Program-made: the position numbers and the translations under genes | Notes under the pieces: model-generated | The model's input: the letters and a program-made list of their open reading frames with translations, nothing else | What the model was told of the DNA's origin: nothing | Database searches by the model: none | Shown: positions 6,501 through 56,900 of the stretch, in pieces | How positions within the stretch are numbered: the stretch's first letter is position 1 | Layout of the letters: each line of letters starts with the position of its first letter | From: Selaginella moellendorffii | Lineage: Eukaryota; Plantae; Lycopodiophyta | Assembly: GCF_000143415.4 (NCBI RefSeq) | Contig: NW_003314263.1 | Coordinates: forward strand, 409,114-473,113 | Reading direction: 5' to 3' | DNA length: 64,000 nucleotides

Positions 6501-7760
6501 GAATACTACTGTCCAAAAATCTTGCCTCCTGGATCATCCCATGGCTGCCTCTCAAGATCTCCCTCTTAAGAAACACCTGTCCATACAAAGCAAAGATACC
6601 TCTGATCTCTCATTGTCCTAGGCTGAAGCTCCCTCAAGCTCCACAACTGTCGTTCATCTATAGAGTATATAGGACTGTAACTTCTCTCTTGATTCCTGCT
6701 TTCTCGCAGAACAGCACAAAGGCTCTGGAAGAATGTCGCTGCTGCTTCCGCATAAGACATGGCTCACACGGTGGCATCTTGGTGGATTTTATGTGCAAAC
6801 CATCCACCACTTGAGCTCGTGACATCTCTCGCAAATGGTTTGTTGATTGATCTCCAGTGCCAAGTCAAGAGATCTGCTGCTCCCCCTGAAGAGGCAGGTG
6901 TCTCAGCTACATGGACTGTCGCCTTTCGTTGTTGTTTTACAGGGCAGTCTCGACTTAAGTGTCCCTTCTTGTGACAAGTGCCACAACGCAAGTTGAATTC
7001 GCGCCACTCACCACGCTCAGCTTTCTCGCCTGTGCACCACCATTCTCTCAAGGTCACGATCGCTTCTTGGAACCCAGGCAATCAAAGACTGAACGGCATG
7101 ACCTTGATCCTTGAGTCACCATCACAACGCTGGTAACCTGGCCATCACGACCAACCAGCAATTTCTCGTACTGGACCAGCTCTGCCATTGAGTGTGGGTG
7201 GATCTTACAGTGATGTCGGCGTGGCCTGAGAGAGAGATTTAAAGGGAAAAAAATCTGCCCGAAATGGACAAAACTGGGCCGTTGGATGAGATCTCGCGAG
7301 CTGCTGCAGAGGACATGTCCTTGAACAAGAAGGCGAATCTCTAGGGCTTTCGGGTGATGAATTTCTAAATTGATTCTTTGCACGAGGCCCTAAAATTCAC
7401 CTGACGTTGACGTGCATCACCGGCGGTTCACATGATCGCCGCTGATTTCGTGACGTGAACGTGAACATTGTGGTCTTGCCAGGTCTACGGTCTTTGTCAT
7501 GGTCAGGCTTTCAGAAACTATGGGCCACAATCCCCACTGCATCAGCCAGAACTGAGCACGTTCTTGCCAGGCCAGGAAATTGTAACACCTCCATCTCTCG
7601 GGAGGGAGCTTCCATTTCAACTCTAACCACAAAGATTGTTACCCTCAATCTGAAATCTTATAGCATGTGGGCAAAAGCCTGGCCTGCAGCACTCTCCTAA
7701 TTATCTCCTCACCAAAAAGACTTCGCATGTGGATCTGCAAACACTCTTACCTACAGCGTG
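3560..7760 (-). mobile_element. Degenerate Ty1/Copia LTR retrotransposon (gag-INT-RT remnants)
   Basis: Minus-strand fragments in Copia order: gag N-terminus (YNFLAWQERAQFWLMQWGLW, ~7500-7630), zinc knuckle CGTCHKKGHLSRDC (~6940-6990), integrase IKVLRSDGGGKY (~6320) and DPKSEKCVFVGY..KAYRL (~5040-5100), RT KARFVAR..QVHGLDY, LYGL, LYVDD, STRPDLAYAVG (~3790-4410). Many frameshifts. Confidence 0.85.
6070..6285 (+). mobile_element. Copia RNase H C-terminal fragment in opposite orientation to the surrounding element
   Basis: Reads VRYHYIREQITAGTLALQYVATTEQIADIFTKPLP (the canonical ADIFTKPL end of Copia pol), followed by a purine-rich tract and TGTT. Confidence 0.75.
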
Positions 7761-8502
7761 TTTCTAAAAAAGTGATGACAGTCATGAGAGCACCGAGTGT
7801 TTGGTCAACAAAACGAGTGTTTAGTACGCCACCGCTGCAGGAAATAGCGTGACGGTGTCACTCGGAGGCAAAAGATTCAAAGGAAGAAAAAGGCAGTGAG
7901 AACTAGACAAAACAATTGTTGTGCCAGTCGCAAGCAACTGGCCTTCCGGGTATTGTTTGCAGCACTCCTTGACATATTTACAAGAAGAAATGGAAAAGTC
8001 ACATGGTCAAGGATGTTGACTAACAAAGCACCGCATACTGGATCATAAGATACTTGATCATAAGATACTTGATCAAAACCAGGGAAGGCGAGCAAGTAGG
8101 CCAACGAGTCCAGTCCCCGAAAGGGGACGCTCTCATTCCCTAGGGCGCCAACAATCTCTACACAACAGGAGTTTGCAATCCCCCGGATCCCAAGGCAAGA
8201 AGGCGCTCTTGGTCCTACAGGAATAGAAGATTAAAAGTCTTCGCCTGAGAGAAGAAGGCACATGCCTTAACCATTTGGCCAAAGGGACATTGCAATTCTT
8301 TATTTTGAGTTTTGCTTTCATACAAGCTTGTAAGTCCCAGCTTTGTGGTGGCACCACAGGCAAAAAGAAACCTCCGGCTTGTCATTAATTCAGAAATAGA
8401 TAAGCAAATATGGTTCACCAGCGAAAACATGAAAAATTTTATGCTCACTTCAAGAATCATATGCTGCTCTTTTTATTCTTCTTAGGACAGGAAATCTCGG
8501 TT

Positions 8503-9051
8503 CTACACCTGGGAGTTGAACAAGCAGTCCCACAGTTTGATCACATGCAACTGCCAAAAGATCTTGGCGCCGTAAGGCTCGAGAGAATGCGTTCTCAGTG
8601 TTGCAAATCCTTGAACAAATCTAAATTCTCCACTTCCTCCCACGATTGAAATCTCCCTCTGCGGATCCGGAGCGCGGTTCTGGCCCAGTAGATTGATGTT
8701 TCCATCTCGCCCCTCGAGCTCCAGGGTGATGCTTGCCAGGAGGCTGATGTTGCTGATAGAATCGAATGCTAATATTCCTTTGGCTCTTCCCACGAGCTTG
8801 GAGTCGATCGAGGGGCCTTCTGTCAGCTTGTCATCGATGATGGCCACCATTCCAAACATGGTGGCGTTGTTCGTGCCTGGAAGAACAATTGCCGTGGTGA
8901 CATTCACCCCGGGCGTTGGGAAGAAGAGATCTTGGAGGTAGAAGCTAATAACTTCAGTGCACTTTGTAAAGTGACTGCTAGAATCCGTTGCCGCGCAAGA
9001 ACTTGCTGCAAAGAAAAATACCACTACAAGGATCTGGATGAGTTTAGCCAT
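8503..9051 (-). CDS. Dirigent protein, copy 1 (182 aa, intronless, signal peptide)
   Basis: Hydrophobic N-terminus and DIR motifs FYLQD, FGMVAIIDDKLTEGP..SKLVGRAKG, REISIVGGSGEFRFVQGFA. N-glycosylation sequons NVT/NAT/NIS. Confidence 0.92.
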   Translation of the reverse strand: MAKLIQILVVVFFFAASSCAATDSSSHFTKCTEVISFYLQDLFFPTPGVNVTTAIVLPGTNNATMFGMVAIIDDKLTEGPSIDSKLVGRAKGILAFDSISNISLLASITLELEGRDGNINLLGQNRAPDPQREISIVGGSGEFRFVQGFATLRTHSLEPYGAKIFWQLHVIKLWDCLFNSQV

Positions 9052-9899
9052 ACTCGTGCTTGTAGGTCTTCCCGGATAATTGAGGAGGTAAATATTATTT
9101 CTTTTATAGAAGAAGAGATGTGGTAGCTTCCAGGTTGATCTTCCAGAAGCAAAGAAACATTCTAGTCCAGAAAAAAAAGTATATCACGGTTTGATTTGAC
9201 TTTGCCTTTAGCTTTATTTGGCTTGTTTTACCAAACTGGAGCACGTAACGCTCCGTCTTGATCTTACCAGTCCTCGCGGCCAAGAAGTACAACGTTTCTG
9301 AACAAAACAAGTGTTTCATCAACCACGCTCTCAACTGTGAGAACGCCGACACGGCTTTGCAATGTACTCTGAAAAAGACTCAGAGGACACCATAGAAATA
9401 GACAAACAAAGTCTTCCACATGGCAACCATAGCACCGGCCTATCGGGTATTGTATTACAGATCGGGCTGTGCCTATCTACATTGAAAAGGAAACGTAAGA
9501 TGGTCTCGGTTGGGGTGAGCTCGCAAAAGCTCATGATCCCGGGGATTGCAAACTCCGCGTAGAGATTGTTGGCGCCCTAGGGAATGAGAGCGTCCCCTTT
9601 TGGGGACTGGGCGTGTTGGCCTACTTGCTCACCTTTCCTGGTTTTGATCAAAATCTAAAAGAATAACATCCAGTATGCGGTGCTTTGTTGGCTTATGTGC
9701 TGGATGTCATGTAGTCTTTCTTGCGTTTCGCCCCTCTCACTTGGTTAATGTAAGCAGCAAGACTTTGCCGTTTGGTTTGTTCGGATGCTTCTGGGGCGAA
9801 TTTCACACTTCGGAATTTTTCGAAACAAGAGCCTTGCCTGATGTCAGATGAAGTTTCTCCTATAAGAGCAGTCGTCTTAATCGAACAAACACCACACGA
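9052..9899. promoter_or_regulatory. Putative bidirectional promoter between DIR1 and P450 copy 1
   Basis: 848 bp between divergent ATGs. TATAAAA on the minus strand at ~9102-9108 and TATAAG on the plus strand at 9861-9866. Confidence 0.55.
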
Positions 9900-11452
9900 A
9901 TGGATCTAGCACTTGCTGTCAGCTTTGCAATTTCCATCGCTCTCTGGGGCTTGTGGCTCTTGAAAGCTCGTTCAAATCTTCCACCAAGTCCATGGGGATT
10001 GCCCCTGATTGGCCACTTACACTTGCTAGCGGGAATGCCCCCGCACAAAGCATTGCAACGCATGGCCAACAAGTATGGTCCTATTATTTCCTTGAGGTTG
10101 GGAATGATCCCAACTGTGGTGATCTCCAGCCCGGAGCTTGCCAAGGAGGTGTTCACCACACATGATCTAAATTTTGCTTCCAGGCCGTACATGGTTTTCG
10201 GCGAGTATTTCAGTTATAGCTCTGTTGGACTTGTAAGTAGTCCCCATGGAAAGCTATGGCGAAACACCCGCAAGCTGTGTACAACGGAGCTCTTCACGGC
10301 CCAGCGTATCGACTCTTTCTCTTGGGTCAGAAGGGAGGAGCTCTCGCGTGCCTTGGAGGGGATTTTGAAGGCTCATGGCAATGACAAGCCTGTGGAGGTG
10401 AGAAAAGTGGCCAGTGTTTTTGCCTTCAACATCACATCACGAATTGTGATGAGCAAGAGGTACTTTGGTGACGAAAACGTGGATGCCGATGCCATGGAAT
10501 TCAAGGAGCTCAATGACAATGTTCTTGAGCTGACCATCAATCCCTGTCTTAGCAACTTGGTGCCCTGGTACCTGAGATGGCTGGACTGGCAGATCCCTCG
10601 GTACAAGCGAATCCATGCCAAGCAAGACAAGTTCTTGCAAAAGATCGTTGACGAGCACAAGGAGACAACACGAAAATGCAAGGACTTCCTTGATATCATG
10701 CTTGACTTCTTTGGAGCAGGGACACAAGGGGAGACTTATGTGAAGGCAAACCTCATGGTAACCCGGGCAAAACTTTTCCATATTGCTGCTAACAGGTATT
10801 TCTATGACAAATGCAGGAGATGTTAATTGGTGGAACTGATACCACCAGCACTGCAAGTGAGTGGCTCATGGCTGTATTGATGCACGATCCTCGAGTCATG
10901 GCCAAGCTCCGCGAGGAGCTCGACAGGGTTGTGCGCAACACTCGGATGGTGCAAGAGTCGGACCTCCCAAAGCTCGAATATCTCCAGCTCGTGCTCAAGG
11001 AGACATTGAGACGCTATCCTCCGGGTGCCATAATTATGCCGCACATCTCAAGCCAAGCATCCAACGTTGGCGGCTTTCACGTTCCAAAAGGGACCACTCT
11101 CCTGGTGAATTCATGGGCGATTGGAATGGATCCGGCAGTATGGGAGAATCCCACACAATTCCACCCGGAGCGCTTCTTGGGGAGCTCCATCGACGTCAAA
11201 GGCCAAAACTTTGAGCTCCTCCCGTTTGGATCCGGCCGTAGAAAGTGTCCAGGAATGGCCATGGGATTGCGAGCAGTGGAGCTTCTCGTGGCGAATCTTA
11301 TCCATGGCTTCGATTGGAGCTTTGTGCCCGGGACAACGCCGTCCATGGAAGATGTTTTTCGCAGTGCTATTCAGCTCAAGACCCCATTGCAAGCCATGGC
11401 AAGTCCAAGGTTCCCAAAGGATGTCTACATCAATCAGACATCACATCTTTAG
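9900..11452 (+). CDS. Cytochrome P450, A-type/CYP71 clan; exons 9900-10757 and 10817-11452 (497 aa)
   Basis: Membrane anchor, PPSPWGLPLIGHLHLL hinge, I-helix GGTDT, KETLR (ExxR), PERF and heme motif FGSGRRKCPG. Single 59-bp phase-0 intron just before the I-helix, as expected for A-type P450s. Confidence 0.95.
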
Positions 11453-24000: not shown

Positions 24001-24841
24001 CAAATATTGGTAATATTCAAAGTGTTCTTTAAACGGTAATGCATATTGTTCTTCAGTCAACTGTCTTGGCTCTTGGCTCCGTTTTTGCCAAGCCTCGATA
24101 ATTGAGGAGGTAAATATTATTTCTTTTGTAGAACAAGAGATGTGGTAGCTTCCAGGTTGATCTTCCAGAAGCAAAGAAACATTCTAGTCCAGAAAAAAAA
24201 GTATATCATGACTTTGCCTTCAGCTTTATTTGGCTTGTTTTACCAAAATGGAGCACATAACGCTCCCTCTTGATCTTACAAGTCCTTGCGGCAACGTTTC
24301 TGAAACAAAACAAGTGTTTCATCAACCATGCTCTCAACTGTGAGACAGACGCCGACACGGCTTTGCAATGTACTCTGCAAAAGACTCAGAGGACACCATA
24401 GAAATAGACAAACAAAGTCTTCCACATGGCAACCATAGCACCGGCCTTTCGGTATTGTGTTACAGATCAGGCTGTGCCTATCTACATTGAAAAGGAAATG
24501 TAAGATGGTCTCGGTTGGGGTGGGCTCGCAAAAGCTCATGAACCACATGGAAATCTTGGAAAGACTCTGCATGGTAGAAATGGCTGACAGAAATCTGGTC
24601 TGGGATGGCGTCTGGCATCCACCAAGTCACTCCATTTGTGCCAGCTCGAGTCGGGATGCATTTGCCACCGTCCTTTCATATGGCTTGGTTAATGCAAGCA
24701 GCAAGACTTTACCGTTAGGTTTGGTTAGATGCTTCTGGGCGAATTTCACACTTTGGAATTTTTCGAAACAAGAGCCTTGCCTGATGTCAGATGAAGTTCT
24801 CCTATAAGAGCAGTCGTCTTAATCGGGCAAACACCACACGA

Positions 24842-26385
24842 ATGGATCTAGCACTTGCTGTCAGTTTTGGAATTTTCATCGCTCTCTGGGGCTTGTGGCT
24901 CTTGAAAGCTCATTCAAATCTTCCACCAAGTCCATGGGGATTGCCCCTGATTGGCCACTTACACTTGCAGGAATGCCCCCGCACAAAGCATTGCAACGCA
25001 TGGCCAACAAGTATGGTCCTATTATTTCCTTGAGGTTGGGAATGATCCCAACTGTGGTGATCTCCAGCCCGGAGCTTGCCAAGGAGGTGGTCACCACACA
25101 TGATCTAAATTTTGCTTACAGGCCGTACATGGTTTTCCGCGAGTATTTCAGTTATAGCTCTGTCGGACTTGTAAGTAGTCCCCATGGAAAGCTATGGCGA
25201 AACACCCGCAAGCTGTGTACAACGGAGCTCTTCACGGCCCACGTATCGACTCTTTCTCTTGGGTCAGAAGGGAGGAGCTCTCGCGTGCCTTGGAGGGGAT
25301 TTTGAAGGCTCATGGCAATGACAAGCCTGTGGAGGTGAGAAAAGTGGCCAGTGTTTTCACCTTCAACATCACATCACGAATTGTGATGAGCAAGAGGTAC
25401 TTTGGTGACGAAAACGTGGATGCTGATGCCATGGAATTCAAGGAGCTCAATGACAATGTTCTTGAGCCATCAATCCCTGTCTTAGCAACTTGGTGCCTTG
25501 GTACCTGAGATGGCTGGACTGGCAGATCCCTCGGTACAAGCGAATCCATGCCAAGCAAGACAAGTTCTTGCAAAAGATCGTTGACGAGCACAAGGAGACA
25601 ACACGAAAATGCAAGGACTTCCTTGATATCATGCTTGACTTCTTTGGAGCAGGGACACAAGGGGAGACTTATGTGAAGGCAAACCTCATGGTAACCCGTG
25701 CAAAACTTTTCCATATTGCTGCTAACAGGTATTTCTATGACAAATGCAGGAGATGTTAATTGGTGGAACTTATACCACCAGCACTGCAAGTGAGTGGCTC
25801 ATAGCTGTATTGATGCACGATCCTCGAGTCATGGCCAAGCTCCGCGAGGGGCTCGACAGGGTTGTGGGCAACACTCGGATGGTGCAAGAGTCGGACCTCC
25901 CAAAGCTCGAATATCTCCAGCTCGTGCTCAAGGAGACATTGAGACGCTATCCTCCGGGTGCCATAATTATGCCGCACATCTCAAGCCAAGCATCCAACGT
26001 TGGCGGCTTTCACGTTCCAAAAGGGACCACTCTCCTGGTGAATTCATGGGCGATTGGAATGGATCCGGCAGTATGGGAGAATCCCACACAATTCCACCCG
26101 GAGCGCTTCTTGGGGAGCTCCATCGACGTCAAAGGCCAAAACTTTGAGCTCCTCCCGTTTGGATCCGGCCGTAGAAAGTGTCCAGGAATGGCCATGGGAT
26201 TGCGAGCAGTGGAGCTTTTCGTGGCGAATCTTATCCATGGATTCGACTGGAGCTTTGTGCCCGGGACAATGCCGTCCATGGAAGATGTTTTTCGCAGTGC
26301 TATTCAGCTCAAGACCCCATTGCAAGCCATGGCAAGTCCAAGGTTCCCAAAGGATGTCTACATCAATCAGACATCACATCTTTAG
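24842..26385 (+). pseudogene. Cytochrome P450 copy 2, frameshifted
   Basis: Near-identical to 9900-11452 but with 4-bp (~24968), 1-bp (~25241) and 4-bp (~25468) deletions. First frame stops at 25033. I-helix GGTDT changed to GGTYT. Same intron at 25691-25749. Confidence 0.9.
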
Positions 26386-28790: not shown

Positions 28791-29333
28791 ATGGCTAAAC
28801 TCATCCAGATCCTTGTAGTGGTAGTTTTCTTTGCAGCAAGTTCTTGCGCGGCAACGGATTCTAGCAGTCACTTTGCAAAGTGCACTGAAGTTATTAGCTT
28901 CTACCTCCATGATCTCTTCTTCCCAACGCCTGGGGTGAATGTCACCACGGCAATTGTTCTTCCAGGCACGAACAACGCCACCATGTTTGGAATGGTGGCC
29001 ATCATCGATGACAAGCTGACAGAAGGCCCCTCGATCGACTCCAAGCTCGTGGGAAGAGCCAAAGGAATATTAGCATTCGATTCTATCAGCAACATCAGCC
29101 TCCTGGCAAGCATCACCCTGGAGCTCGAGGGGCGAGATGGAAACATCAATCTACTGGGCCAGAACCGCGCTCTGGATCCGCAGAGGGAGATTTCAATCGT
29201 GGGAGGAAGTGGAGAATTTAGATTTGTTCAAGGATTTGCAACACTGAGAACGCATTCTCGCGAGCCTTACGGCACCAAGGTCTTTTGGCAGGTGTATGTG
29301 ATCAAACTGTGGGACTGCGTGTTCAACTCCTAG
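28791..29333 (+). CDS. Dirigent protein, copy 2 (180 aa, intact ORF)
   Basis: Highly similar inverted paralog of 8503-9051, with an FYLHD motif. Confidence 0.9.
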   Translation: MAKLIQILVVVVFFAASSCAATDSSSHFAKCTEVISFYLHDLFFPTPGVNVTTAIVLPGTNNATMFGMVAIIDDKLTEGPSIDSKLVGRAKGILAFDSISNISLLASITLELEGRDGNINLLGQNRALDPQREISIVGGSGEFRFVQGFATLRTHSREPYGTKVFWQVYVIKLWDCVFNS

Positions 29334-30299
29334 GTGTAGAACCGAGATTTCCTGTCCTAAGAAGAATAAGTGAGCATAAATTTTTTCATGTTTTCGCTGG
29401 TGAACCATATTTGTTTATCTCCTGTTTATCTTGCACTTTGTGCCTTGATATGGAATTTGGCAAGCCGGTCTTTTTGCCTAAAGTTGGACAAGGAGCTTGC
29501 ATGAAAGCAAAACTCAAAATAAAGAATTGCATTGATCTTCCATAGCAATGTCCCTTTGGCCAAGGCGTGTGCCTTCTAGGTACATGAGGTCTCTCAGGCG
29601 AAAACTTTTAATCTTCTATTCCTGTGAATCTCTAGGACCAAGAGCGCCTTCTTGCCTTTGGATCCCGGGGATTGCAAACTCCGCGTAGAGATTGTTGGCG
29701 CCCTAGGGAATGAGAGCGTCCCCTTTCGGGGACTGGGCGCCTTCCCTGGTTTTGAACAAAATCTAAAAGAATAACATCCATCTTGCTTTGTTGGCTTATG
29801 TGCTAGATGTCATGTAGTCTTTCTTGCGTTTCGCCCCTCTCAGACGTGAATGTAGGGCGTTGACCTAGCCCGCACGACTTGACCATGTGACTTTTCCATT
29901 GGTTGCTTGTTCTTCGTCAAGGGGTGCTGCCCGCGCTGCAAACAATACCCGGAAGGCCGGTTGCTTGCGACTGGCACAACACTTGTTTTGTCTAGTTCTC
30001 ACTGTCTTTTTCTTCCTCTGAATCTTTCTCCTGCTTTGCCTCCAAATGCCATTTCCTGCAGCGGTGGCGTACTAAACACTCGTTTTGTTGACCAAACACT
30101 AGTGATGGGCCTTAAGGTTCCACGGCAGAGTTCATTGGTACTAATCTGTTTTAATTACTGGGAATGACTACTGTTTGACAAGGAAAAGGAGGCTTGCGAT
30201 TATACTAACGGCCACATGAAAGCTTGTTCAAATTCAAAGTGTCATAAAAACAAGTAATATTTATTCTTCTACAAAAGGAATTCTCCAGGGAAGAAAGTA

Positions 30300-30570
30300 T
30301 GTGGGAAGAGCCAAGGGAATGCTAGTGTTTGATTCTATCAGCAACATTAGCCTCCTGGTGAGCATGACCCTGGAGTTCGAGGGCAAGATGAAAACATCAA
30401 TCTGCTAGGCCAGAACCACGCTCTCGATCCGGATTTCAATCGTGGGAGGAAGTGGAGAGTTTAGATTTTCTGGAGGGTTTGCAACGCTGAGACTGCATTC
30501 TCTCGAGCCTTACGGCACGAAGGTCTTCTACCAGTTGTATGTGACCGGAGTGCTTGTACAAATCCTAGGT
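30300..30570 (+). pseudogene. Dirigent relic 3 (C-terminal half, deletions)
   Basis: VGRAKGMLVFDSISNISLLVSMTLE...SIVGGSGEFRFSGGFATLRLHSLEPYGTKVFYQLYV, with frameshifts. Confidence 0.8.
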
Positions 30571-31119: not shown

Positions 31120-31425
31120 CTTACTCTTCCTCCCAACGCCCGAGTGAATGTCGCCACTTCCAGGCACGATCAACGCCACCATGTTTGGAATGGTGTCCAG
31201 ACAAGCTGACACAAACCCCCTCGATCGGCTCCAAGCTCGTGGGAAGAGTAGTGTTTGCTTCTATCAGCAACATCAGCCTCCTGGTGTCGGGCTAGATGAA
31301 CGCATCATGGACCAGAACCACGCTCTGGGATGGGAGGCTGAGAACGCATTCTCTCGAGCCTTACAGCTCCAAGATCTTCTTCCAGTTTATGTGACCATAC
31401 TGTGGGAGTGCTTGTTCAAATCTCC
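31120..31425 (+). pseudogene. Dirigent relic 4 (many internal deletions)
   Basis: Colinear patches of DIR DNA: CCAGGCACGA.CAACGCCACCATGTTTGGAATGGTG, CCAAGCTCGTGGGAAGAG, CTGAGAACGCATTCTC.CGAGCCTTAC. Confidence 0.75.
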
Positions 31426-31656: not shown

Positions 31657-32532
31657 TTATAAACACTTGAGGAACTTTGTCCAGCCAATGTGAATCCCTT
31701 GGACCAAGAGCGCCTCCAGTTCCACCGGATGCTCGCCACTCTTGTTCTTCCCTTGTTGCATCACTTGGAAGCACTTAAGGTACACACTCTTGTCCACAAA
31801 CCTTGGAGGATCCCAGGGATTGAAAACGTCATCGCCGCCAAGGGGCGCATAGAGATTGTTGGCGGCCCAGGGAACGATGGAGGCAAGCAAGTAGGCCACC
31901 AAAAGCCTACCCACGCGTCCATTCCCATCCCTGAACGGGTGGACACTCTCAAACCTGTAAAAAAAGGCGGCGCTGATGCTCACCACCTTTGCAACCCTGA
32001 GCTTGGGATCTGCTGCAAATGCCTCCTTGAGGGATTTGTTGGTAGATGACACTAGCTGCTCGAGAGCCGCCGGGATCTTCTTAGGATCCATGTAGACATG
32101 CTTGCGTTTCTCTGTGGTCAATGTCCAGGCCTCGCCCCTCCGGAACTCCCCCGCGTCGACCTCGTCCTTGGTATTCTCCCCAAGCATCTTATGGATCTGG
32201 AGAATCTTTTCGAAATCTAGGCGTGGAACTTTCTCGGCCTTAGCCAGAGCGTTGACCCAGCACAGGCATTTGTAAAGGTTGAGCGTTGACGTGAGCTTTG
32301 GTTTTTTGTCACCGCCAAAGCCGTCAAGCGCAAAGGACTTTGTCTGGTCGTACTGGTTAATGGCATCACTGACCTCTTGCAGTGTATCGAGCCCTTCGCC
32401 CTCGATGTGTGCCACTTGGAACACAAACTCTTTCACCATTGCTCTGCCTTGCTTGAGTGCGCCACTCTTCTTCTTCTCAGGCAGTGATTCATACCTTGAC
32501 ACGCACTTCTCAATGCTCTTGATCATCGCCAT
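31657..32532 (-). CDS. Fic/Fido-domain protein (class II-like AMP-transferase), 291 aa, intronless
   Basis: Canonical catalytic motif HPFRDGNGRVGR, upstream ILQIHKML...AGEFR element, and N-terminal inhibitory-helix-like FQVAHIEG. TATATAAA on the minus strand at ~32646-32653. Confidence 0.9.
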   Translation of the reverse strand: MAMIKSIEKCVSRYESLPEKKKSGALKQGRAMVKEFVFQVAHIEGEGLDTLQEVSDAINQYDQTKSFALDGFGGDKKPKLTSTLNLYKCLCWVNALAKAEKVPRLDFEKILQIHKMLGENTKDEVDAGEFRRGEAWTLTTEKRKHVYMDPKKIPAALEQLVSSTNKSLKEAFAADPKLRVAKVVSISAAFFYRFESVHPFRDGNGRVGRLLVAYLLASIVPWAANNLYAPLGGDDVFNPWDPPRFVDKSVYLKCFQVMQQGKNKSGEHPVELEALLVQGIHIGWTKFLKCL

Positions 32533-50198: not shown

Positions 50199-53100
50199 TC
50201 TAAGCAACTAAATTTTTCATTCTACTTTAATCACTTAACCACACCTCTGACCACTTGGAGGAGTCTCACTCACAACCTCCATAAGTCTTATTCTAGATTT
50301 AGTGACCTGCTAGCCCCAAAAATGGCATCCATGCTACTCAACCATTGCACTTGGTCCAAGTGCTCCACGTGTTCAATCCCATAACCGACACCCCAAGGTA
50401 CCACCGACATATCAGCCCATTACGCTAAGGCCATGCCCATTCACCTTGGTCACACTGGTGGTCTAACACCACTTACATCACAGTCTCATCTCTCAAAGAC
50501 TAGACCATCCATCCATAAGTGATCATCCTAGATCCACTCCTTAGCATCCTTAGGATGCCCGTAGACATGGGGAATAACATTCCCCAATATCACTTTTTCA
50601 GTCCCCACCAAGTACCTTTCTATCCATGGCCGTATTTGCTAACACTGTGTAAGCGATTAAATTTTCCATTCTACTTTAGTCAATTAACCACACCTCTGAC
50701 CACTTGGAGGAGTCTCATTCACAACCTCCTTAAGTCCAATTCAGGACTTGGGACCTGCTAGTCCCGAGAATGGCATCCATGCCACTCATCCCTTGCACTT
50801 GGTCCAAGTGCTCCACATGTCCAGTCCCAAGACCGACAACCAAAGGTACCACTGACATATCGGCCCGTTACGCTAAGGCCATGCCCATTCACCTTTGCTG
50901 CACTAGTGGACCAATACCACTTGCATCACAATCCCGTCTCTCCAAGACTGGGCCGTCCGTCCACGAGTGGTCATCCCAGATCCACTCCTTAGCATCCTTA
51001 GGATGTCCACAGACATGGGGAATAACCTTCCCCAACATCCCTTTGTTAGTTCTTGCCAAGTCCCCTTTCCGTCCATGGCCATATCACCAACACTGCCACT
51101 AGATCAAGGCCCGCAGGCCCGGCCACTAAGTCCCATTGTCCTCTGGGACTTCCTCACCATGTGACCGTATCCATAGTCACTACACTAGAGGATTGCTCCT
51201 CCTCCTTTCCCCCATTTGGGACTTCGGGACAATATTTCGGAACACCGTGGCCCTACGCAAGCCCCGTGGGTACTCTCCCCACCTTCCGCCTTTAGGTGCT
51301 CTAGCCATGGGCTTAGAGTGAGGTTTCGTTGAGCCACACAAGGTATCCAAGTAGGTAGTGCCACCCACACTTGGACTGGGAGCATCGGCCAATCGATCTC
51401 CTGGGGGAACTAGAGCTGGCTCTTGAACACTTCACTAAGCTACCCTGCTTGTCGGTCCGTGTTCACTCTAGTCTTGGACTTCCCAGTGGGCAGCTCATCA
51501 CCCAACACTGGGTCCGGCCTTCCTGGGCCAAACTAGCCTTTCCTGGCCAAACTGGCTCCACTGCAGTCCTCCCCCTTACTATACTTTTGGAGCTCAACAA
51601 ACCCCCCAGGGTCTGGGAGATGAACGCTTTGGGCTTTCACTCTCTCAGACTCGAACTCGGACTCGGCCTCGGCCTCGGTCTCGGTCTTGGTCCTGGTCTC
51701 GGTCTCGGTCTCGGTCCCGGGCTCGGTCTTGGTCCCGGTCTTGACTTCAGACTCCATCTCGGACTCCATCTCGGGTCCGTCTCGGGTCCACCTCGGACTC
51801 CATCTCGGACTCCACCTCGGACTCCATCTTGGACTCCATCTCGGGTCCATCTCGGACTCCATCTCGGACTCCATCTTAGGTCCATCTCGGACTCCATCTC
51901 GGACTCCATCTCGGGTCCATCTCGGACTCCATCTCAGACTCCATCTTGGGTCCATCTCGGACTCCATCTCGGGTCCATCTCGGACTCTATCTCGGGTCCA
52001 TCTCGGACTCCATCTCGGACTCCATCTCGGGTCCGTCTCGGACTCAATCTCGGATCCATCTCGGGTCCACCTCGGACTCCACATCGGACTCCACCTCGGA
52101 CTCCACCTCGGACTCCATCTCGGGGTCCTTCTCGGACACTTCCACGTGTCATGTGTTGGTCCTTTTGGGTCCCTTTTTGGAGCCTTGTTTATTGCTCACT
52201 TTGTGCTCATTCCTCGAGCACTTCGTTGGGAGTTCCACTCCCACTCTCGACCTTTTCAAGTCAGAGCTTTTAGTCCAAATGTGTTACGCTCGTTTAGCTT
52301 TCGCTTCGGCCACTACCACGTGGCACCCTTCCGGCTCCACTTTGGGGCCTAGGGATTTTGTGTCTCACACACTGCCACTGGATCAAAGCCCACAAGTCCG
52401 ACCACTAAGTCCCACGGTCCTTTAGGACTTCCTCACCACATGACTGTAGCCTTGGTCACTACATCAGAGGACTTCTCCTCTTCCTTTCCAAAGTCTAGGA
52501 CTTTGGGACAACGATTCGGAACATTGTAGCCCTATGTGAGCCTTATGGGTACTCTCCCCGCCTTCCTCCTTTGGGTGCTCTAGCCATGGGCTTAGAGCGA
52601 GGTTCCATTAAGCCATGCCAGGTATCCAAGTAGGTAGTGCCACCCACACTTGGACTGGGAGCATCGGCCAATCGATCTCCTGGGGGAACTAGAGCTGGCT
52701 CTTGAACACTTCACTAAGCTACCCTGCTTGTCGGTCCGTGTTCACTCTAGTCTTGGACTTCCCAGTGGGCAGCTCATCACCCAACACTGGGTCCGGCCTT
52801 CCTGGGCCAAACTAGCCTTTCCTGGCCAAACTGGCTCCACTGCAGTCCTCCCCCTTACTATACTTTTGGAGCTCAACAAACCCCCCAGGGTCTGGGAGAT
52901 GAACGCTTTGGGCTTTCACTCTCTCAGACTCGAACTCGGACTCGGCCTCGGCCTCGGTCTCGGTCTTGGTCCTGGTCTCGGTCTCGGTCTCGGTCCCGGG
53001 CTCGGTCTTGGTCCCGGTCTTGACTTCAGACTCCATCTCGGACTCCATCTCGGGTCCGTCTCGGGTCCACCTCGGACTCCATCTCGGACTCCACCTCGGA

Positions 53101-55973
53101 CTCCATCTTGGACTCCATCTCGGGTCCATCTCGGACTCCATCTCGGACTCCATCTTAGGTCCATCTCGGACTCCATCTCGGACTCCATCTCGGGTCCATC
53201 TCGGACTCCATCTCAGACTCCATCTTGGGTCCATCTCGGACTCCATCTCGGGTCCATCTCGGACTCTATCTCGGGTCCATCTCGGACTCCATCTCGGACT
53301 CCATCTCGGGTCCGTCTCGGACTCAATCTCGGATCCATCTCGGGTCCACCTCGGACTCCACATCGGACTCCACCTCGGACTCCACCTCGGACTCCATCTC
53401 GGGGTCCTTCTCGGACACTTCCACGTGTCATGTGTTGGTCCTTTTGGGTCCCTTTTTGGAGCCTTGTTTATTGCTCACTTTGTGCTCATTCCTCGAGCAC
53501 TTCGTTGGGAGTTCCACTCCCACTCTCGACCTTTTCAAGTCAGAGCTTTTAGTCCAAATGTGTTACGCTCGTTTAGCTTTCGCTTCGGCCACTACCACGT
53601 GGCACCCTTCCGGCTCCACTTTGGGGCCTAGGGATTTTGTGTCTCACACACTGCCACTGGATCAAAGCCCACAAGTCCGACCACTAAGTCCCACGGTCCT
53701 TTAGGACTTCCTCACCACATGACTGTAGCCTTGGTCACTACATCAGAGGACTTCTCCTCTTCCTTTCCAAAGTCTAGGACTTTGGGACAACGATTCGGAA
53801 CATTGTAGCCCTATGTGAGCCTTATGGGTACTCTCCCCGCCTTCCTCCTTTGGGTGCTCTAGCCATGGGCTTAGAGCGAGGTTCCATTAAGCCATGCCAG
53901 GTATCCAAGTAGGTAGTGCCACCTATACTTGGACTGGGAGCATTGACCATTCGATCTCCCAGGGGAACTAGAGCCGGCTTTTGAACACTTCACCAAGCTA
54001 CCCCACTTGTCAGTCCATATTCACTCTAGTCTTGGACTTCCTAGTGGTTAGCTCATCATGCAACACTTGGGTATAGCCTTCCTGGGCACAGCCTTCCTGG
54101 GCCAAATTGGTTCCACTGGGGTCCAACCCCCACACTCTATATATTAGAAGTTTGGAATTTGGAACCGCCTACAGGATCTGGTCAGATGTACTGACTATGA
54201 GCTTTGCACTCTGGTCAGACTCGAACTCGGACTCGTCCTCGGCCTCGGTCTCGGTCTTGGTCCTGGTCTCGGTCTCGGCCTCGGTCCCGGGCTCGGTCTT
54301 GGTCCCGGTCTTGACTTCAGACTCCATCTCGGACTCCATCTCGAGTCCGTCTCGGGGCCACCTCGGACTCCATCTCGGACTCCACCTCTGACTNNNNNNN
54401 NNNNNNNNNNNNNNNNNNNNNNNNNNNNNNNNNNNNNNNNNNNNNNNNNNNNNNNNNNNNNNNNNNNNNNNNNNNNNNNNNNNNNNNNNNNNNNNNNNNN
54501 NNNNNNNNNNNNNNNNNNNNNNNNNNNNNNNNNNNNNNNNNNNNNNNNNNNNNNNNNNNNNNNNNNNNNNNNNNNNNNNNNNNNNNNNNNNNNNNNNNNN
54601 NNNNNNNNNNNNNNNNNNNNNNNNNNNNNNNNNNNNNNNNNNNNNNNNNNNNNNNNNNNNNNNNNNNNNNNNNNNNNNNNNNNNNNNNNNNNNNNNNNNN
54701 NNNNNNNNNNNNNNNNNNNNNNNNNNNNNNNNNNNNNNNNNNNNNNNNNNNNNNNNNNNNNNNNNNNNNNNNNNNNNNNNNNNNNNNNNNNNNNNNNNNN
54801 NNNNNNNNNNNNNNNNNNNNNNNNNNNNNNNNNNNNNNNNNNNNNNNNNNNNNNNNNNNNNNNNNNNNNNNNNNNNNNNNNNNNNNNNNNNNNNNNNNNN
54901 NNNNNNNNNNNNNNNNNNNNNNNNNNNNNNNNNNNNNNNNNNNNNNNNNNNNNNNNNNNNNNNNNNNNNNNNNNNNNNNNNNNNNNNNNNNNNNNNNNNN
55001 NNNNNNNNNNNNNNNNNNNNNNNNNNNNNNNNNNNNNNNNNNNNNNNNNNNNNNNNNNNNNNNNNNNNNNNNNNNNNNNNNNNNNNNNNNNNNNNNNNNN
55101 NNNNNNNNNNNNNNNNNNNNNNNNNNNNNNNNNNNNNNNNNNNNNNNNNNNNNNNNNNNNNNNNNNNNNNNNNNNNNNNNNNNNNNNNNNNNNNNNNNNN
55201 NNNNNNNNNNNNNNNNNNNNNNNNNNNNNNNNNNNNNNNNNNNNNNNNNNNNNNNNNNNNNNNNNNNNNNNNNNNNNNNNNNNNNNNNNNNNNNNNNNNN
55301 NNNNNNNNNNNNNNNNNNNNNNNNNNNNNNNNNNNNNNNNNNNNNNNNNNNNNNNNNNNNNNNNNNNNNNNNNNNNNNNNNNNGACCGAGATGGAGTCCG
55401 AGATGGAGTCCGAGATGGAGTCTGAGATGGATTTGAGATAGAGTTCAAGATGGAGTCTGAGATGGACCCGAGATGGAGTCTGAGATGGAGTCCGAGATGG
55501 AGTCCGAGATGGACCCAAGATGGAGTTCGAGATGGACCCGAGATGGAGTTCGAGATGGACCCGAGATGGAGTTTGAGATGGACCCAAGATGACCTTGGAT
55601 TGATGCTCTGTTTGTGCAGAGGAAGAACGTCGAGCCACTTTTCTGGTGTGCAAAATCACCCTCAACACACCCGCGTCCCTGCAAAGTACCCGCTTCTAAG
55701 TAAGTGAGCAAAGATAATCTTTCTGATCCATACTCTCCGTTCTTTGTTTGCAGCGGCCAGCAGCGATCATCGGGTTCCTTTTCTAGAAACTCACTTATTG
55801 CTCACTTTGTACTCGTTCCTCGAGCACTTCGTTAGGAGTTCCACTCCCGCTCTCGATTTTTCAAGTCAGAGCTTTTGGTCCAAATGTGTTACGCTCGTTT
55901 GGCCTTCACTTTGGCCACTACCACGTGGCACCCTTTCGGCTCCATTTTGGGGCTTAGGGATTTGTGTCTCACA
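50199..55973. mobile_element. LTR-derived tandem array with a 12-bp minisatellite (CTCGGACTCCAT), inserted in an older LTR copy; contains the N gap 54394-55383
   Basis: Flanked by CTAAT/CTAGT (putative TSD) and ends in ...TCTCACA. A ~450-bp duplication (50199/50648) and 1279-bp period repeats (51090/52369/53648). Confidence 0.65.
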
Positions 55974-56900
55974 CTAGTATGATATAGAACTTAGGCTTAA
56001 ACCCAACCAAACGTAGAACAAGAGAAAACACGCAAGCAAAAGCTAAATTATACCTCAGGTTGGTTGACCATACCCAATTTACCTATATTATACATTTGGA
56101 ATCCCCCCCTAATGAATATATGCTTTAGGCTAACCACCCTTAATACCAAGAGTTAGTCTCTGGGGCTAACTCGAAATTTACTAAATATAAACTGTTCTTA
56201 GATTGTAAATTTGGATGTGGGATGAACACCATTGTGTTCAAAATAATCTCTACATTCTATAAATATGCCAAATGAGCAAATCTAAACACTTTTCATATAT
56301 AACAATTGAAACCAAATAGTATTAACACAAGATGTATAATAGCAAGTGTGTTTGACAAACACAATAAGCTATCATCTAGTAATATTAAGAGACTAATCTC
56401 AGTATATAAAGGTTCTTGCTAAACTAGTGCAAAACATAGCAAAAGAAAATTAACAAGTCAGGCCAAGTATGCTTGGCTAAATAGAAATTTAGGAATTCCT
56501 TCCCCGGCCAAGTACAGATGCTAAGTCCAGTTTACTAACACTGACAAAAGGGACTAATAAAAGGGTCTAACAATATTGACCTCCTACTGTCATAGTAGTA
56601 AGGAAAGAATATCCAAAAGGATTAAACGATAGATAACTTTTAATACCTATAATGAAGATAGAACGATCCAGTGGATTGGTAGTAGGATGGCTTAGACAAT
56701 GCAACTGGCCATAGCAAGCAAACATTCAGTGAATGGCAGGAAGCAAGATCCTCTTCAGCACACATCTAGTAGTTCATTTATATGTTTTAACTTAAAAGCT
56801 AATCAATGTAGTTAATTTACCACAAGCGTTTGACTCTTGAGGTCAAGCCGAGAGCGCATTCTAGACCGTATGTGATGGTCACACGCATCATTCTCGAGCG

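What the first reader, a model, noticed from the sequence alone, without database searches (positions are those of the whole stretch)
8503..11452. Head-to-head dirigent + CYP71-clan P450: candidate two-gene phenolic-coupling cluster
Seen: two intact genes 848 bp apart, divergently transcribed, with TATA-like boxes facing each gene. The locus holds 2 P450 and 4 DIR copies or relics within ~23 kb. Known: dirigent proteins control regio/stereoselective coupling or cyclisation of phenolic radicals and quinone methides (lignans, gossypol, pterocarpans), and CYP71-clan enzymes hydroxylate or couple phenolics. Selaginella makes biflavonoids, (neo)lignans and selaginellins. Inference: a co-regulated biosynthetic unit for a lineage-specific coupled phenolic. 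Caveat: the DIR has a signal peptide while the P450 is ER-anchored and cytosol-facing, so they may act sequentially rather than as a complex.
Basis: partly seen in the sequence, partly recalled or inferred. Interest (0 to 1): 0.78.

Follow-up and report, generated by a model that had tools for sequence, protein, structure and literature searches.

The report
Neighbouring dirigent and CYP797B5 genes
Two already-annotated spikemoss genes, a secreted dirigent protein and the cytochrome P450 CYP797B5, really do sit head to head and are both transcribed, but nothing found here shows that they work together.

Summary
The window is Selaginella moellendorffii GL377567.1:409114-473113. An intact 182-aa dirigent gene (8503-9051, minus strand) lies 848 bp from an intact two-exon P450 (9900-11452, plus strand). 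That P450 is the annotated CYP797B5 (SELMODRAFT_78600), a CYP71-clan member. Each gene has its own TATA box. Stranded RNA reads cover both genes on the expected strands and confirm the 59-nt intron. No reads cover most of the spacer. The window also holds a frameshifted second P450, a second intact dirigent gene and two dirigent relics.

The "co-regulated coupling unit" reading is not supported beyond adjacency.
- Eight other paralogue loci (five CYP797-like, three dirigent) show no such partner within 10 kb.
- A sister locus 1.6 Mb away on the same scaffold (96-98% identical) pairs an intact dirigent gene with a broken P450, and the intact CYP797B7 with a dirigent relic.
- No other pathway enzymes lie nearby.
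- About 75-90% of the P450 reads come from CYP797B7, not from this copy.

Most likely this is a young, rearranging duplicated array of two large gene families. A P450-then-dirigent pathway has a precedent and is not excluded (about 0.2). The scan noted two other dirigent + P450 + UGT loci in this genome; I did not test them.

The parts
8503..9051 (-). DIR-A: intact single-exon dirigent gene, 182 aa. It has a hydrophobic signal-peptide-like N-terminus and three N-glycosylation sequons (N50, N62, N101).
   Evidence: PF03018, E=6e-31; solved dirigent structures, E=1e-17; RNA depth 8-11 on the minus strand, no paralogue letters.
9101..9109 (-). TATA box (CTATAAAAG) of DIR-A, 50-58 nt upstream of its ATG.
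   Evidence: sequence. One search shows coverage fading within 9028-9168.
9052..9899 (.). 848-bp spacer between the two start codons. No RNA reads fall in 9169-9591, so the two transcripts are separate.
9535..9739 (+). About 200-bp repeated element inside the spacer. Other copies lie at 8022-8189 (inverted, downstream of DIR-A) and 29661-29842 (downstream of DIR-B). In the sister locus a 2.7-kb insertion sits at this place.
9862..9867 (+). TATA-like box (TATAAG) of CYP797B5, 33-38 nt before the ATG. This implies a very short 5' UTR.
   Evidence: depth rises from about 0.5 in 9733-9873 to 23 in 9874-10014, and a contig starts at 9894.
9900..10757 (+). CYP797B5 exon 1, 286 codons. It holds the membrane anchor and the PPSP hinge.
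10758..10816 (+). 59-nt GT..AG intron, phase 0, just before the I-helix.
   Evidence: 31 spliced reads in X21, plus contigs in X2 and X8.
10817..11452 (+). CYP797B5 exon 2, 211 codons plus stop. It holds GGTDTT, ETLR, PERF and FGSGRRKCPG.
24097..24544 (+). Copy of the DIR-proximal part of the spacer (A 9075-9539, 91% identical). It now lies upstream of P450-B with no dirigent gene attached.
24842..26385 (+). P450-B, a pseudogene copy. It has deletions of 4, 1 and 4 nt in exon 1 and an I-helix D->Y change.
28791..29333 (+). DIR-B: intact second dirigent gene, 180 aa, 94% identical to DIR-A. It is on the same strand as P450-B and 2.4 kb downstream of it. Homology to copy A stops about 35 nt upstream of its ATG, so it lacks the copy-A promoter.
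30271..30543 (+). Dirigent relic 1. It covers only the C-terminal half and has an in-frame stop.
31124..31388 (+). Dirigent relic 2, about 41% identical in protein, with a stop codon. In the sister locus its equivalent lies head to head with intact CYP797B7.

Best explanation
These are two separately promoted, already annotated genes of two large plant families. They became neighbours once and were then copied together by a local inverted or tandem duplication in a fast-rearranging stretch of Selaginella moellendorffii scaffold GL377567.1.

DIR-A encodes a secreted, glycosylated dirigent beta-barrel protein. It keeps the pocket residues thought to stabilise quinone-methide-type intermediates.

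CYP797B5 encodes an ER-anchored CYP71-clan monooxygenase from a family whose named members found here are all from Selaginella moellendorffii. Its substrate is unknown.

Each gene is transcribed from its own TATA promoter. The head-to-head arrangement is most likely a by-product of gene-dense, duplication-prone DNA rather than a selected co-regulated unit. Any shared pathway would have to be sequential: the P450 acts at the ER, the product is exported, and the dirigent step happens in the wall.

Shown here: gene structures, family membership, transcription, duplication history, and lack of linkage at paralogue loci.
Inferred: biochemical roles, and the absence of functional coupling.
For: Identity and integrity of the genes:
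- Pfam hits.
- The P450 equals CYP797B5, SELMODRAFT_78600.
- All canonical P450 motifs are present.
- The nearest solved structures are CYP76AH1, CYP76AH3, CYP93C and CYP73A.
- The dirigent protein matches solved dirigent structures at E=1e-17 to 8e-13.
- It keeps the equivalents of GePTS1 D50, D83, T86, S93, N137 and R145 (PMC7450108).

Separate transcripts on the expected strands, with zero reads across 9169-9591.

Duplication and decay:
- Self-comparison shows a second, rearranged copy in the window.
- The sister locus at GL377567.1:1995888-2039481 is 96-98% identical and inverted.
- In the window, P450-B is frameshifted and DIR-B is cut off from the copy-A promoter.
- In the sister locus, the intact dirigent gene P0140 faces the broken CYP797B8 across a 2.7-kb insertion, and the intact CYP797B7 faces only a dirigent relic.

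No linkage elsewhere:
- No dirigent sequence lies within 10 kb of five other CYP797-like paralogues.
- No P450 lies within 10 kb of three other dirigent loci.

No laccase, peroxidase, methyltransferase or glycosyltransferase was found among the large ORFs of the window that I scanned.

Both families are under ordinary purifying selection (dN/dS about 0.3 against the 82-83% paralogues).
Against: The unit does seem to have been duplicated as a pair. Both sister loci keep at least one intact dirigent gene and exactly one intact CYP797B within about 25 kb. That fits either neutral loss of redundant copies or retention of a working pair.

In the one raw-read RNA run, DIR-A (depth about 8-11) and the CYP797B5-specific share (about 10-25% of depth 40-60) are at similar levels.

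A P450 followed by a dirigent-family enzyme is a proven pathway logic: SlCYP722C then SRF in orobanchol synthesis (PMC11214005).

The scan noted two other dirigent + P450 + UGT loci in this genome (s1-395671, s1-433269). I could not test them.
Confidence: 0.6

Rival explanations
1. The pair is a working two-gene metabolic module. CYP797B5 oxidises a phenolic or other precursor at the ER. The secreted dirigent protein then directs stereoselective coupling or cyclisation of that product in the apoplast. The shared 848-bp spacer co-regulates both genes.
For: - The genes lie head to head under 1 kb apart, with TATA boxes facing each.
- Both are transcribed in the same sample at similar depth.
- The pair appears to have been duplicated as a unit. 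A dirigent relic lies head to head with CYP797B7, and P0140 lies head to head with CYP797B8.
- There is a precedent for a P450-then-dirigent pathway (PMC11214005).
- The quinone-methide-stabilising Arg is conserved.
Against: - The adjacency is missing at all eight other paralogue loci checked.
- Three of the four units have lost the intact pairing.
- The more highly expressed P450, CYP797B7, has no intact dirigent neighbour.
- There are two separate core promoters about 750 bp apart, and part of the spacer is a repeated element.
- No oxidase or tailoring genes lie nearby.
- Only one raw-read RNA run was examined.
Confidence: 0.2
2. The two genes are co-expressed because they share open chromatin or a stress-responsive spacer, but they act in unrelated pathways. 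Both families are typical defence- and stress-induced families that expand in birth-and-death arrays.
For: - Both are transcribed in the same run.
- The locus shows rapid duplication, pseudogenisation and rearrangement.
- DIR-A and DIR-B differ by 10 nonsynonymous changes against 1 synonymous. The counts are small and not significant.
Against: No expression series was available, so co-expression itself is unproven. Contig-based runs show the dirigent gene at much lower depth than the summed P450 copies, and absent in one run.
Confidence: 0.15

Closest known systems
Dirigent proteins of the DIR-b/d type (pterocarpan synthases GePTS1/PsPTS1, PDB 6OOC/6OOD; 8TH2)
   Same: - Pfam PF03018 covers residues 35-169.
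- These are the best matches among solved structures (E about 1e-17).
- The protein has a signal peptide and N-glycosylation sequons.
- The equivalents of D50, D83, T86, S93, N137 and the quinone-methide-stabilising R145 are kept (PMC7450108).
   Different: - Identity to angiosperm dirigent proteins is only about 32-43%.
- Y103 is replaced by Leu, H49 by Gln and R160 by Gln.
- The Selaginella clade has its own C-terminal extension with a Cys (C176) and an N-terminal Cys (C31).
- Subfamily placement was not resolved by a tree.
- The substrate is unknown.
Pinoresinol-forming DIR-a proteins (AtDIR6 5LAL, PsDRR206 4REV)
   Same: Same fold family, and the alignment covers the full length (E=4e-15 and 8e-13).
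   Different: The match is weaker than to the DIR-b/d structures. There is no evidence of monolignol-coupling activity, and these proteins also need a separate one-electron oxidase.
CYP71-clan (A-type) plant P450s, family CYP797 (Nelson nomenclature name in UniProt)
   Same: - The database name is CYP797B5.
- It has an N-terminal anchor, a PPSP hinge, GGTDTT, ETLR, PERF and FGSGRRKCPG.
- It has a single intron before the I-helix.
- The nearest solved structures are CYP76AH1/3, CYP93C and CYP73A.
   Different: - Identity to angiosperm families (CYP71D, CYP81E/Q, CYP736, CYP75B) is only about 27-41% over exon 1, which does not place it in any of them.
- The RefSeq names 'flavonoid 3'-monooxygenase' and 'CYP736A12' are automatic best-hit labels.
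- No paper in the searched library discusses CYP797.
SlCYP722C + SRF (DIR-f) in orobanchol synthesis
   Same: A P450 makes a reactive product, and a dirigent-family protein then closes it stereoselectively. The Arg that paper aligns with GePTS1 R145 is also kept here, as DIR-A R132 (PMC11214005).
   Different: The P450 is from a different family and the dirigent protein from a different subfamily. I did not check whether those genes are physically linked. No chemistry is known for the Selaginella pair.
Plant biosynthetic gene clusters and bidirectional-promoter gene pairs
   Same: Two non-homologous enzyme-type genes lie side by side, head to head and under 1 kb apart.
   Different: Only two gene types are present. 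There is no shown common pathway, no shown co-regulation and no conservation at paralogue loci.

Membership tests
Dirigent protein family (PF03018) | Dirigent domain detected above the curated threshold | tested here: met
   107.6 bits against a cut-off of 29.1, E=6e-31, covering residues 35-169.
Dirigent protein family (PF03018) | Secretory signal peptide and glycosylation sequons | tested here: met
   hydrophobic core at residues 4-14 (mean Kyte-Doolittle 3.1), an AxA-like end at CAA, and sequons N50, N62 and N101. No dedicated predictor was run.
Dirigent protein family (PF03018) | Conserved pocket residues (GePTS1 D50, N137, R145) | tested here: met
   D41, N125 and R132 align with them. 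The numbering was checked against PMC7450108.
Dirigent protein family (PF03018) | Widely conserved Tyr (GePTS1 Y103) that hydrogen-bonds to D50 | tested here: not met
   it is Leu94 in DIR-A and Leu in all seven Selaginella clade members aligned.
DIR-b/d subfamily | Phylogenetic placement with characterised DIR-b/d members | tested here: inconclusive
   The best structure and database hits are DIR-b/d-type. No tree with reference subfamilies was built.
CYP71-clan P450, family CYP797B | P450 domain and signature motifs (hinge, I-helix, ExxR, PERF, heme Cys loop) | tested here: met
CYP71-clan P450, family CYP797B | Closest relatives are CYP71-clan members, and nomenclature identity thresholds are met | tested here: met
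   - the top solved structures are CYP76AH, CYP93C and CYP73A.
- the UniProt name is CYP797B5.
- 64-83% identity to the nearest Selaginella paralogues (CYP797B9, CYP797B13 and CYP797B20 sit in their clusters), and under 42% to angiosperm families.
Plant biosynthetic gene cluster | Non-homologous biosynthetic genes physically adjacent | tested here: met
   a dirigent gene and a P450, 848 bp apart.
Plant biosynthetic gene cluster | The genes act in one pathway | not testable with these tools
   This needs biochemistry or genetics.
Plant biosynthetic gene cluster | Co-expression of members | tested here: inconclusive
   both are transcribed in one stranded run at similar copy-specific depth. Three contig runs are uninformative, and no expression series was available.
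Plant biosynthetic gene cluster | Linkage retained among paralogues or related loci | tested here: not met
   no partner lies within 10 kb at eight other loci; the sister locus pairs intact genes with broken partners.

The most novel reading that the evidence does not exclude
DIR-A and CYP797B5 (with CYP797B7) could form a minimal, lineage-specific two-gene module. The P450 product would be stereoselectively coupled or cyclised by the secreted dirigent protein, giving a Selaginella-specific phenolic such as a lignan or neolignan or a selaginellin precursor. To my knowledge that would be the first physically linked dirigent-P450 pathway unit in a lycophyte.
Probability: 0.15. Interest if true: 0.65.

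Novelty: new member of a known kind. Interest (0 to 1): 0.3.

Why it matters
If the two genes did share a pathway, the pair would give a short route to an unknown Selaginella coupled phenolic. It would also give a function to CYP797, a P450 family with none assigned in the library searched here, and to a lycophyte dirigent clade; more than 95% of dirigent proteins have no known activity (PMC7450108). On the present evidence it is mainly a tidy example of birth and death of duplicated defence- or metabolism-type genes. It is also a warning that adjacency alone over-predicts clusters in a compact genome.

Tried and rejected
- Literature searches for CYP797, for the gene and protein accessions, and for Selaginella dirigent/P450 clusters found nothing relevant.
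- The Selaginella expression-atlas preprint does not mention dirigent proteins or these genes. The journal version and the 2008 syringyl-lignin paper are not held. My recollection that a CYP797B paralogue (ABV80355) came from that study's candidate set is therefore untested.
- Look-ups of CYP797B7 (P0123) and P0078 by exact sequence found no record.
- The biflavonoid idea is weakened, because a CYP90E from this species already shows weak apigenin-dimerising activity.
- I could not identify the other dirigent + P450 + UGT loci noted by the scan among the P450 paralogues I looked up.
- A clean single-inversion model for copy B did not fit the order of the flank pieces, so I describe it only as a complex rearrangement.
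- I could not decide whether the sister locus is the second haplotype or a true segmental duplicate.
Searches used each exon by reference, or the database protein P0070 returned by the tool.
- No structure or complex prediction was run. The sequence evidence for both folds is conclusive, and a secreted protein and a cytosol-facing P450 are not expected to bind.

Full report
**What is there**

The window is Selaginella moellendorffii scaffold GL377567.1, positions 409114-473113, plus strand.

An uninterrupted 182-codon ORF lies at 8503-9051 on the minus strand. It matches the Pfam Dirigent domain (E=6e-31) and solved dirigent structures (8TH2, GePTS1, PsPTS1, AtDIR6 and DRR206; E=1e-17 to 8e-13). 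Its N-terminus is a typical signal peptide, and it carries three N-glycosylation sequons.

On the plus strand, 848 bp away, a P450 gene runs from 9900 to 11452 in two exons. A 59-nt GT..AG intron at 10758-10816 separates them. Exon 1 is 100% identical to database protein P0070, which is SELMODRAFT_78600. UniProt names it CYP797B5. It is 497 aa long, the length my exon model predicts.

All P450 signature motifs are present. The nearest solved structures are plant CYP71-clan enzymes: CYP76AH1/3, CYP93C and CYP73A. Identity to angiosperm families is only about 27-41% over exon 1. The RefSeq labels 'flavonoid 3'-monooxygenase' and 'CYP736A12' on this protein and its paralogues are therefore best-hit names, not functions. 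No paper in the searched library discusses CYP797 or these gene accessions.

**Promoters and transcripts**

A canonical CTATAAAAG lies on the minus strand at 9109->9101, 50-58 nt before the dirigent ATG. TATAAG lies at 9862-9867, 33-38 nt before the P450 ATG.

In a stranded raw-read RNA run (X21), the dirigent gene is covered at depth about 8-11 by reads of minus-strand origin. The P450 is covered at depth about 23-80 by reads of plus-strand origin. The intron is spliced in 31 reads, and no read falls in 9169-9591. These are two separate transcripts from two core promoters about 750 bp apart.

At diagnostic positions, 75-90% of the P450 reads carry the letters of CYP797B7, a 98-99% identical copy elsewhere on the scaffold. 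Only about 10-25% carry those of CYP797B5. Its own depth is therefore similar to that of DIR-A, whose reads show almost no paralogue letters. The three older runs are held only as contigs and cannot give expression levels.

**The locus is a rearranging duplicated array**

The window holds a second unit:
- a copy of the DIR-proximal spacer at 24097-24544;
- P450-B at 24842-26385, on the plus strand, with deletions of 4, 1 and 4 nt in exon 1, so it is a pseudogene;
- an intact DIR-B at 28791-29333, also on the plus strand, whose homology to copy A stops about 35 nt before its ATG, so it has lost the copy-A promoter;
- two dirigent relics with stop codons.

A sister locus lies 1.6 Mb away on the same scaffold, inverted and 96-98% identical. 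It has the same flanking UBR/PRT6 gene on one side, and an enolase gene where the window has homologous DNA on the other. It could be the second haplotype or a recent segmental duplicate; I could not decide. There, an intact dirigent gene (P0140) faces CYP797B8 across a 2.7-kb insertion. CYP797B8 is broken by four deletions and a stop codon. The intact CYP797B7 faces only the equivalent of relic 2.

The pair was therefore probably duplicated as a head-to-head unit. Of the four units, only the one in this finding still has both members intact and adjacent.

**Tests of the 'cluster' reading**

- No dirigent-like sequence lies within 10 kb of five other CYP797-like paralogues (83%, 70%, 64%, 48% and 47% identical).
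- No P450-like sequence lies within 10 kb of three other dirigent loci (82% and 51-52% identical).
- The other genes identified in the window are UBR/PRT6, a Fic-domain gene, an enolase, a PPR gene and Nse4. No oxidase, methyltransferase or glycosyltransferase was found among the ORFs scanned.
- About 200 bp of the spacer is a repeated element, also found downstream of DIR-A and DIR-B.
- Both families show ordinary purifying selection against their 82-83% paralogues (dN/dS about 0.3). DIR-A and DIR-B differ by 10 nonsynonymous and 1 synonymous changes, which is too few to test.

**How the proteins probably work**

DIR-A keeps the equivalents of GePTS1 D50, D83, T86, S93, N137 and R145. R145 is the arginine proposed to stabilise the quinone-methide oxygen (PMC7450108). 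DIR-A and its Selaginella relatives replace the widely conserved Y103 by Leu and R160 by Gln. They also share a Cys near each end. It is a bona fide dirigent protein of a divergent lycophyte clade. Its substrate is unknown, as for more than 95% of the family (PMC7450108).

CYP797B5 is a standard ER-anchored monooxygenase. A sequential P450-then-dirigent route has a precedent in orobanchol synthesis (PMC11214005), so a shared pathway is possible. For biflavonoids, the weakly active candidate in this species is a CYP90E, from a different P450 family (PMC12370966).

**Verdict**

Functional coupling is unproven, and the paralogue and sister-locus evidence mildly argues against it. I put about 0.6 on neutral adjacency within a duplicating array, about 0.2 on a real two-gene module, and about 0.15 on co-expression without a shared pathway. 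The scan noted two other dirigent + P450 + UGT loci in this genome. I could not reach them with the look-ups available.

Noticed in passing
window 24842-26385; L003:5275-6793; L005:10052-11601: Pseudogenisation is reciprocal between the two sister loci. In the window, CYP797B5 is intact and P450-B is frameshifted. In the sister locus, the positional equivalent of B5 (CYP797B8) is broken and the equivalent of P450-B (CYP797B7) is intact and is the main expressed copy.
   Followed up: yes
window 11002-11283: Antisense-oriented RNA reads (depth about 10-13) cover this stretch. They carry letters that match none of the four local P450 copies (for example 11111 T>G in 20 of 20 reads). They probably come from another CYP797B paralogue or fragment that is transcribed in reverse.
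   Followed up: partly
window 10072-10184: Three reads show a minor GT..AG splice that skips 111 nt inside exon 1 of the P450.
   Followed up: no
L005:10001-10051 (CYP797B7 RefSeq model XP_002962504.2, 514 aa): The RefSeq model starts 17 codons upstream of the canonical ATG. It reads through the stretch equivalent to the window's TATA box at 9862-9867, so its start is probably mis-called.
   Followed up: partly
window 31657-32532 (-): An intact 291-aa ORF with a Fic/DOC domain (Pfam E=6.7e-19) lies next to dirigent relic 2. It is the subject of another note of the scan.
   Followed up: partly
window 50201-55974: A large tandem repeat (units about 1.28 kb, 94% alike, with nested repeats of about 150-210 bp) lies in a GC-rich, strongly C-skewed stretch. 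It runs into the 990-N assembly gap at 54394-55383.
   Followed up: no
window 6764-7081 (-): An ORF with a CX2CX4HX4C zinc knuckle (CGTCHKKGHLSRDC) lies between the UBR gene and DIR-A. It looks like a retroelement gag relic.
   Followed up: no
window 8022-8189 and 9535-9689: DIR-A is bracketed by inverted copies of an element of about 170 bp (84.5% alike). The same element follows DIR-B at 29661-29842. It may be a substrate for the local rearrangements.
   Followed up: partly
alignment A1 (DIR-A, DIR-B, P0140, P0002, P0145, P0003, P0004): All seven members of this Selaginella dirigent clade share several features: Cys31, a C-terminal LW(D/E/K)C extension, Leu in place of GePTS1 Y103, and Gln in place of R160. 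The two cysteines might form a lineage-specific disulfide.
   Followed up: no
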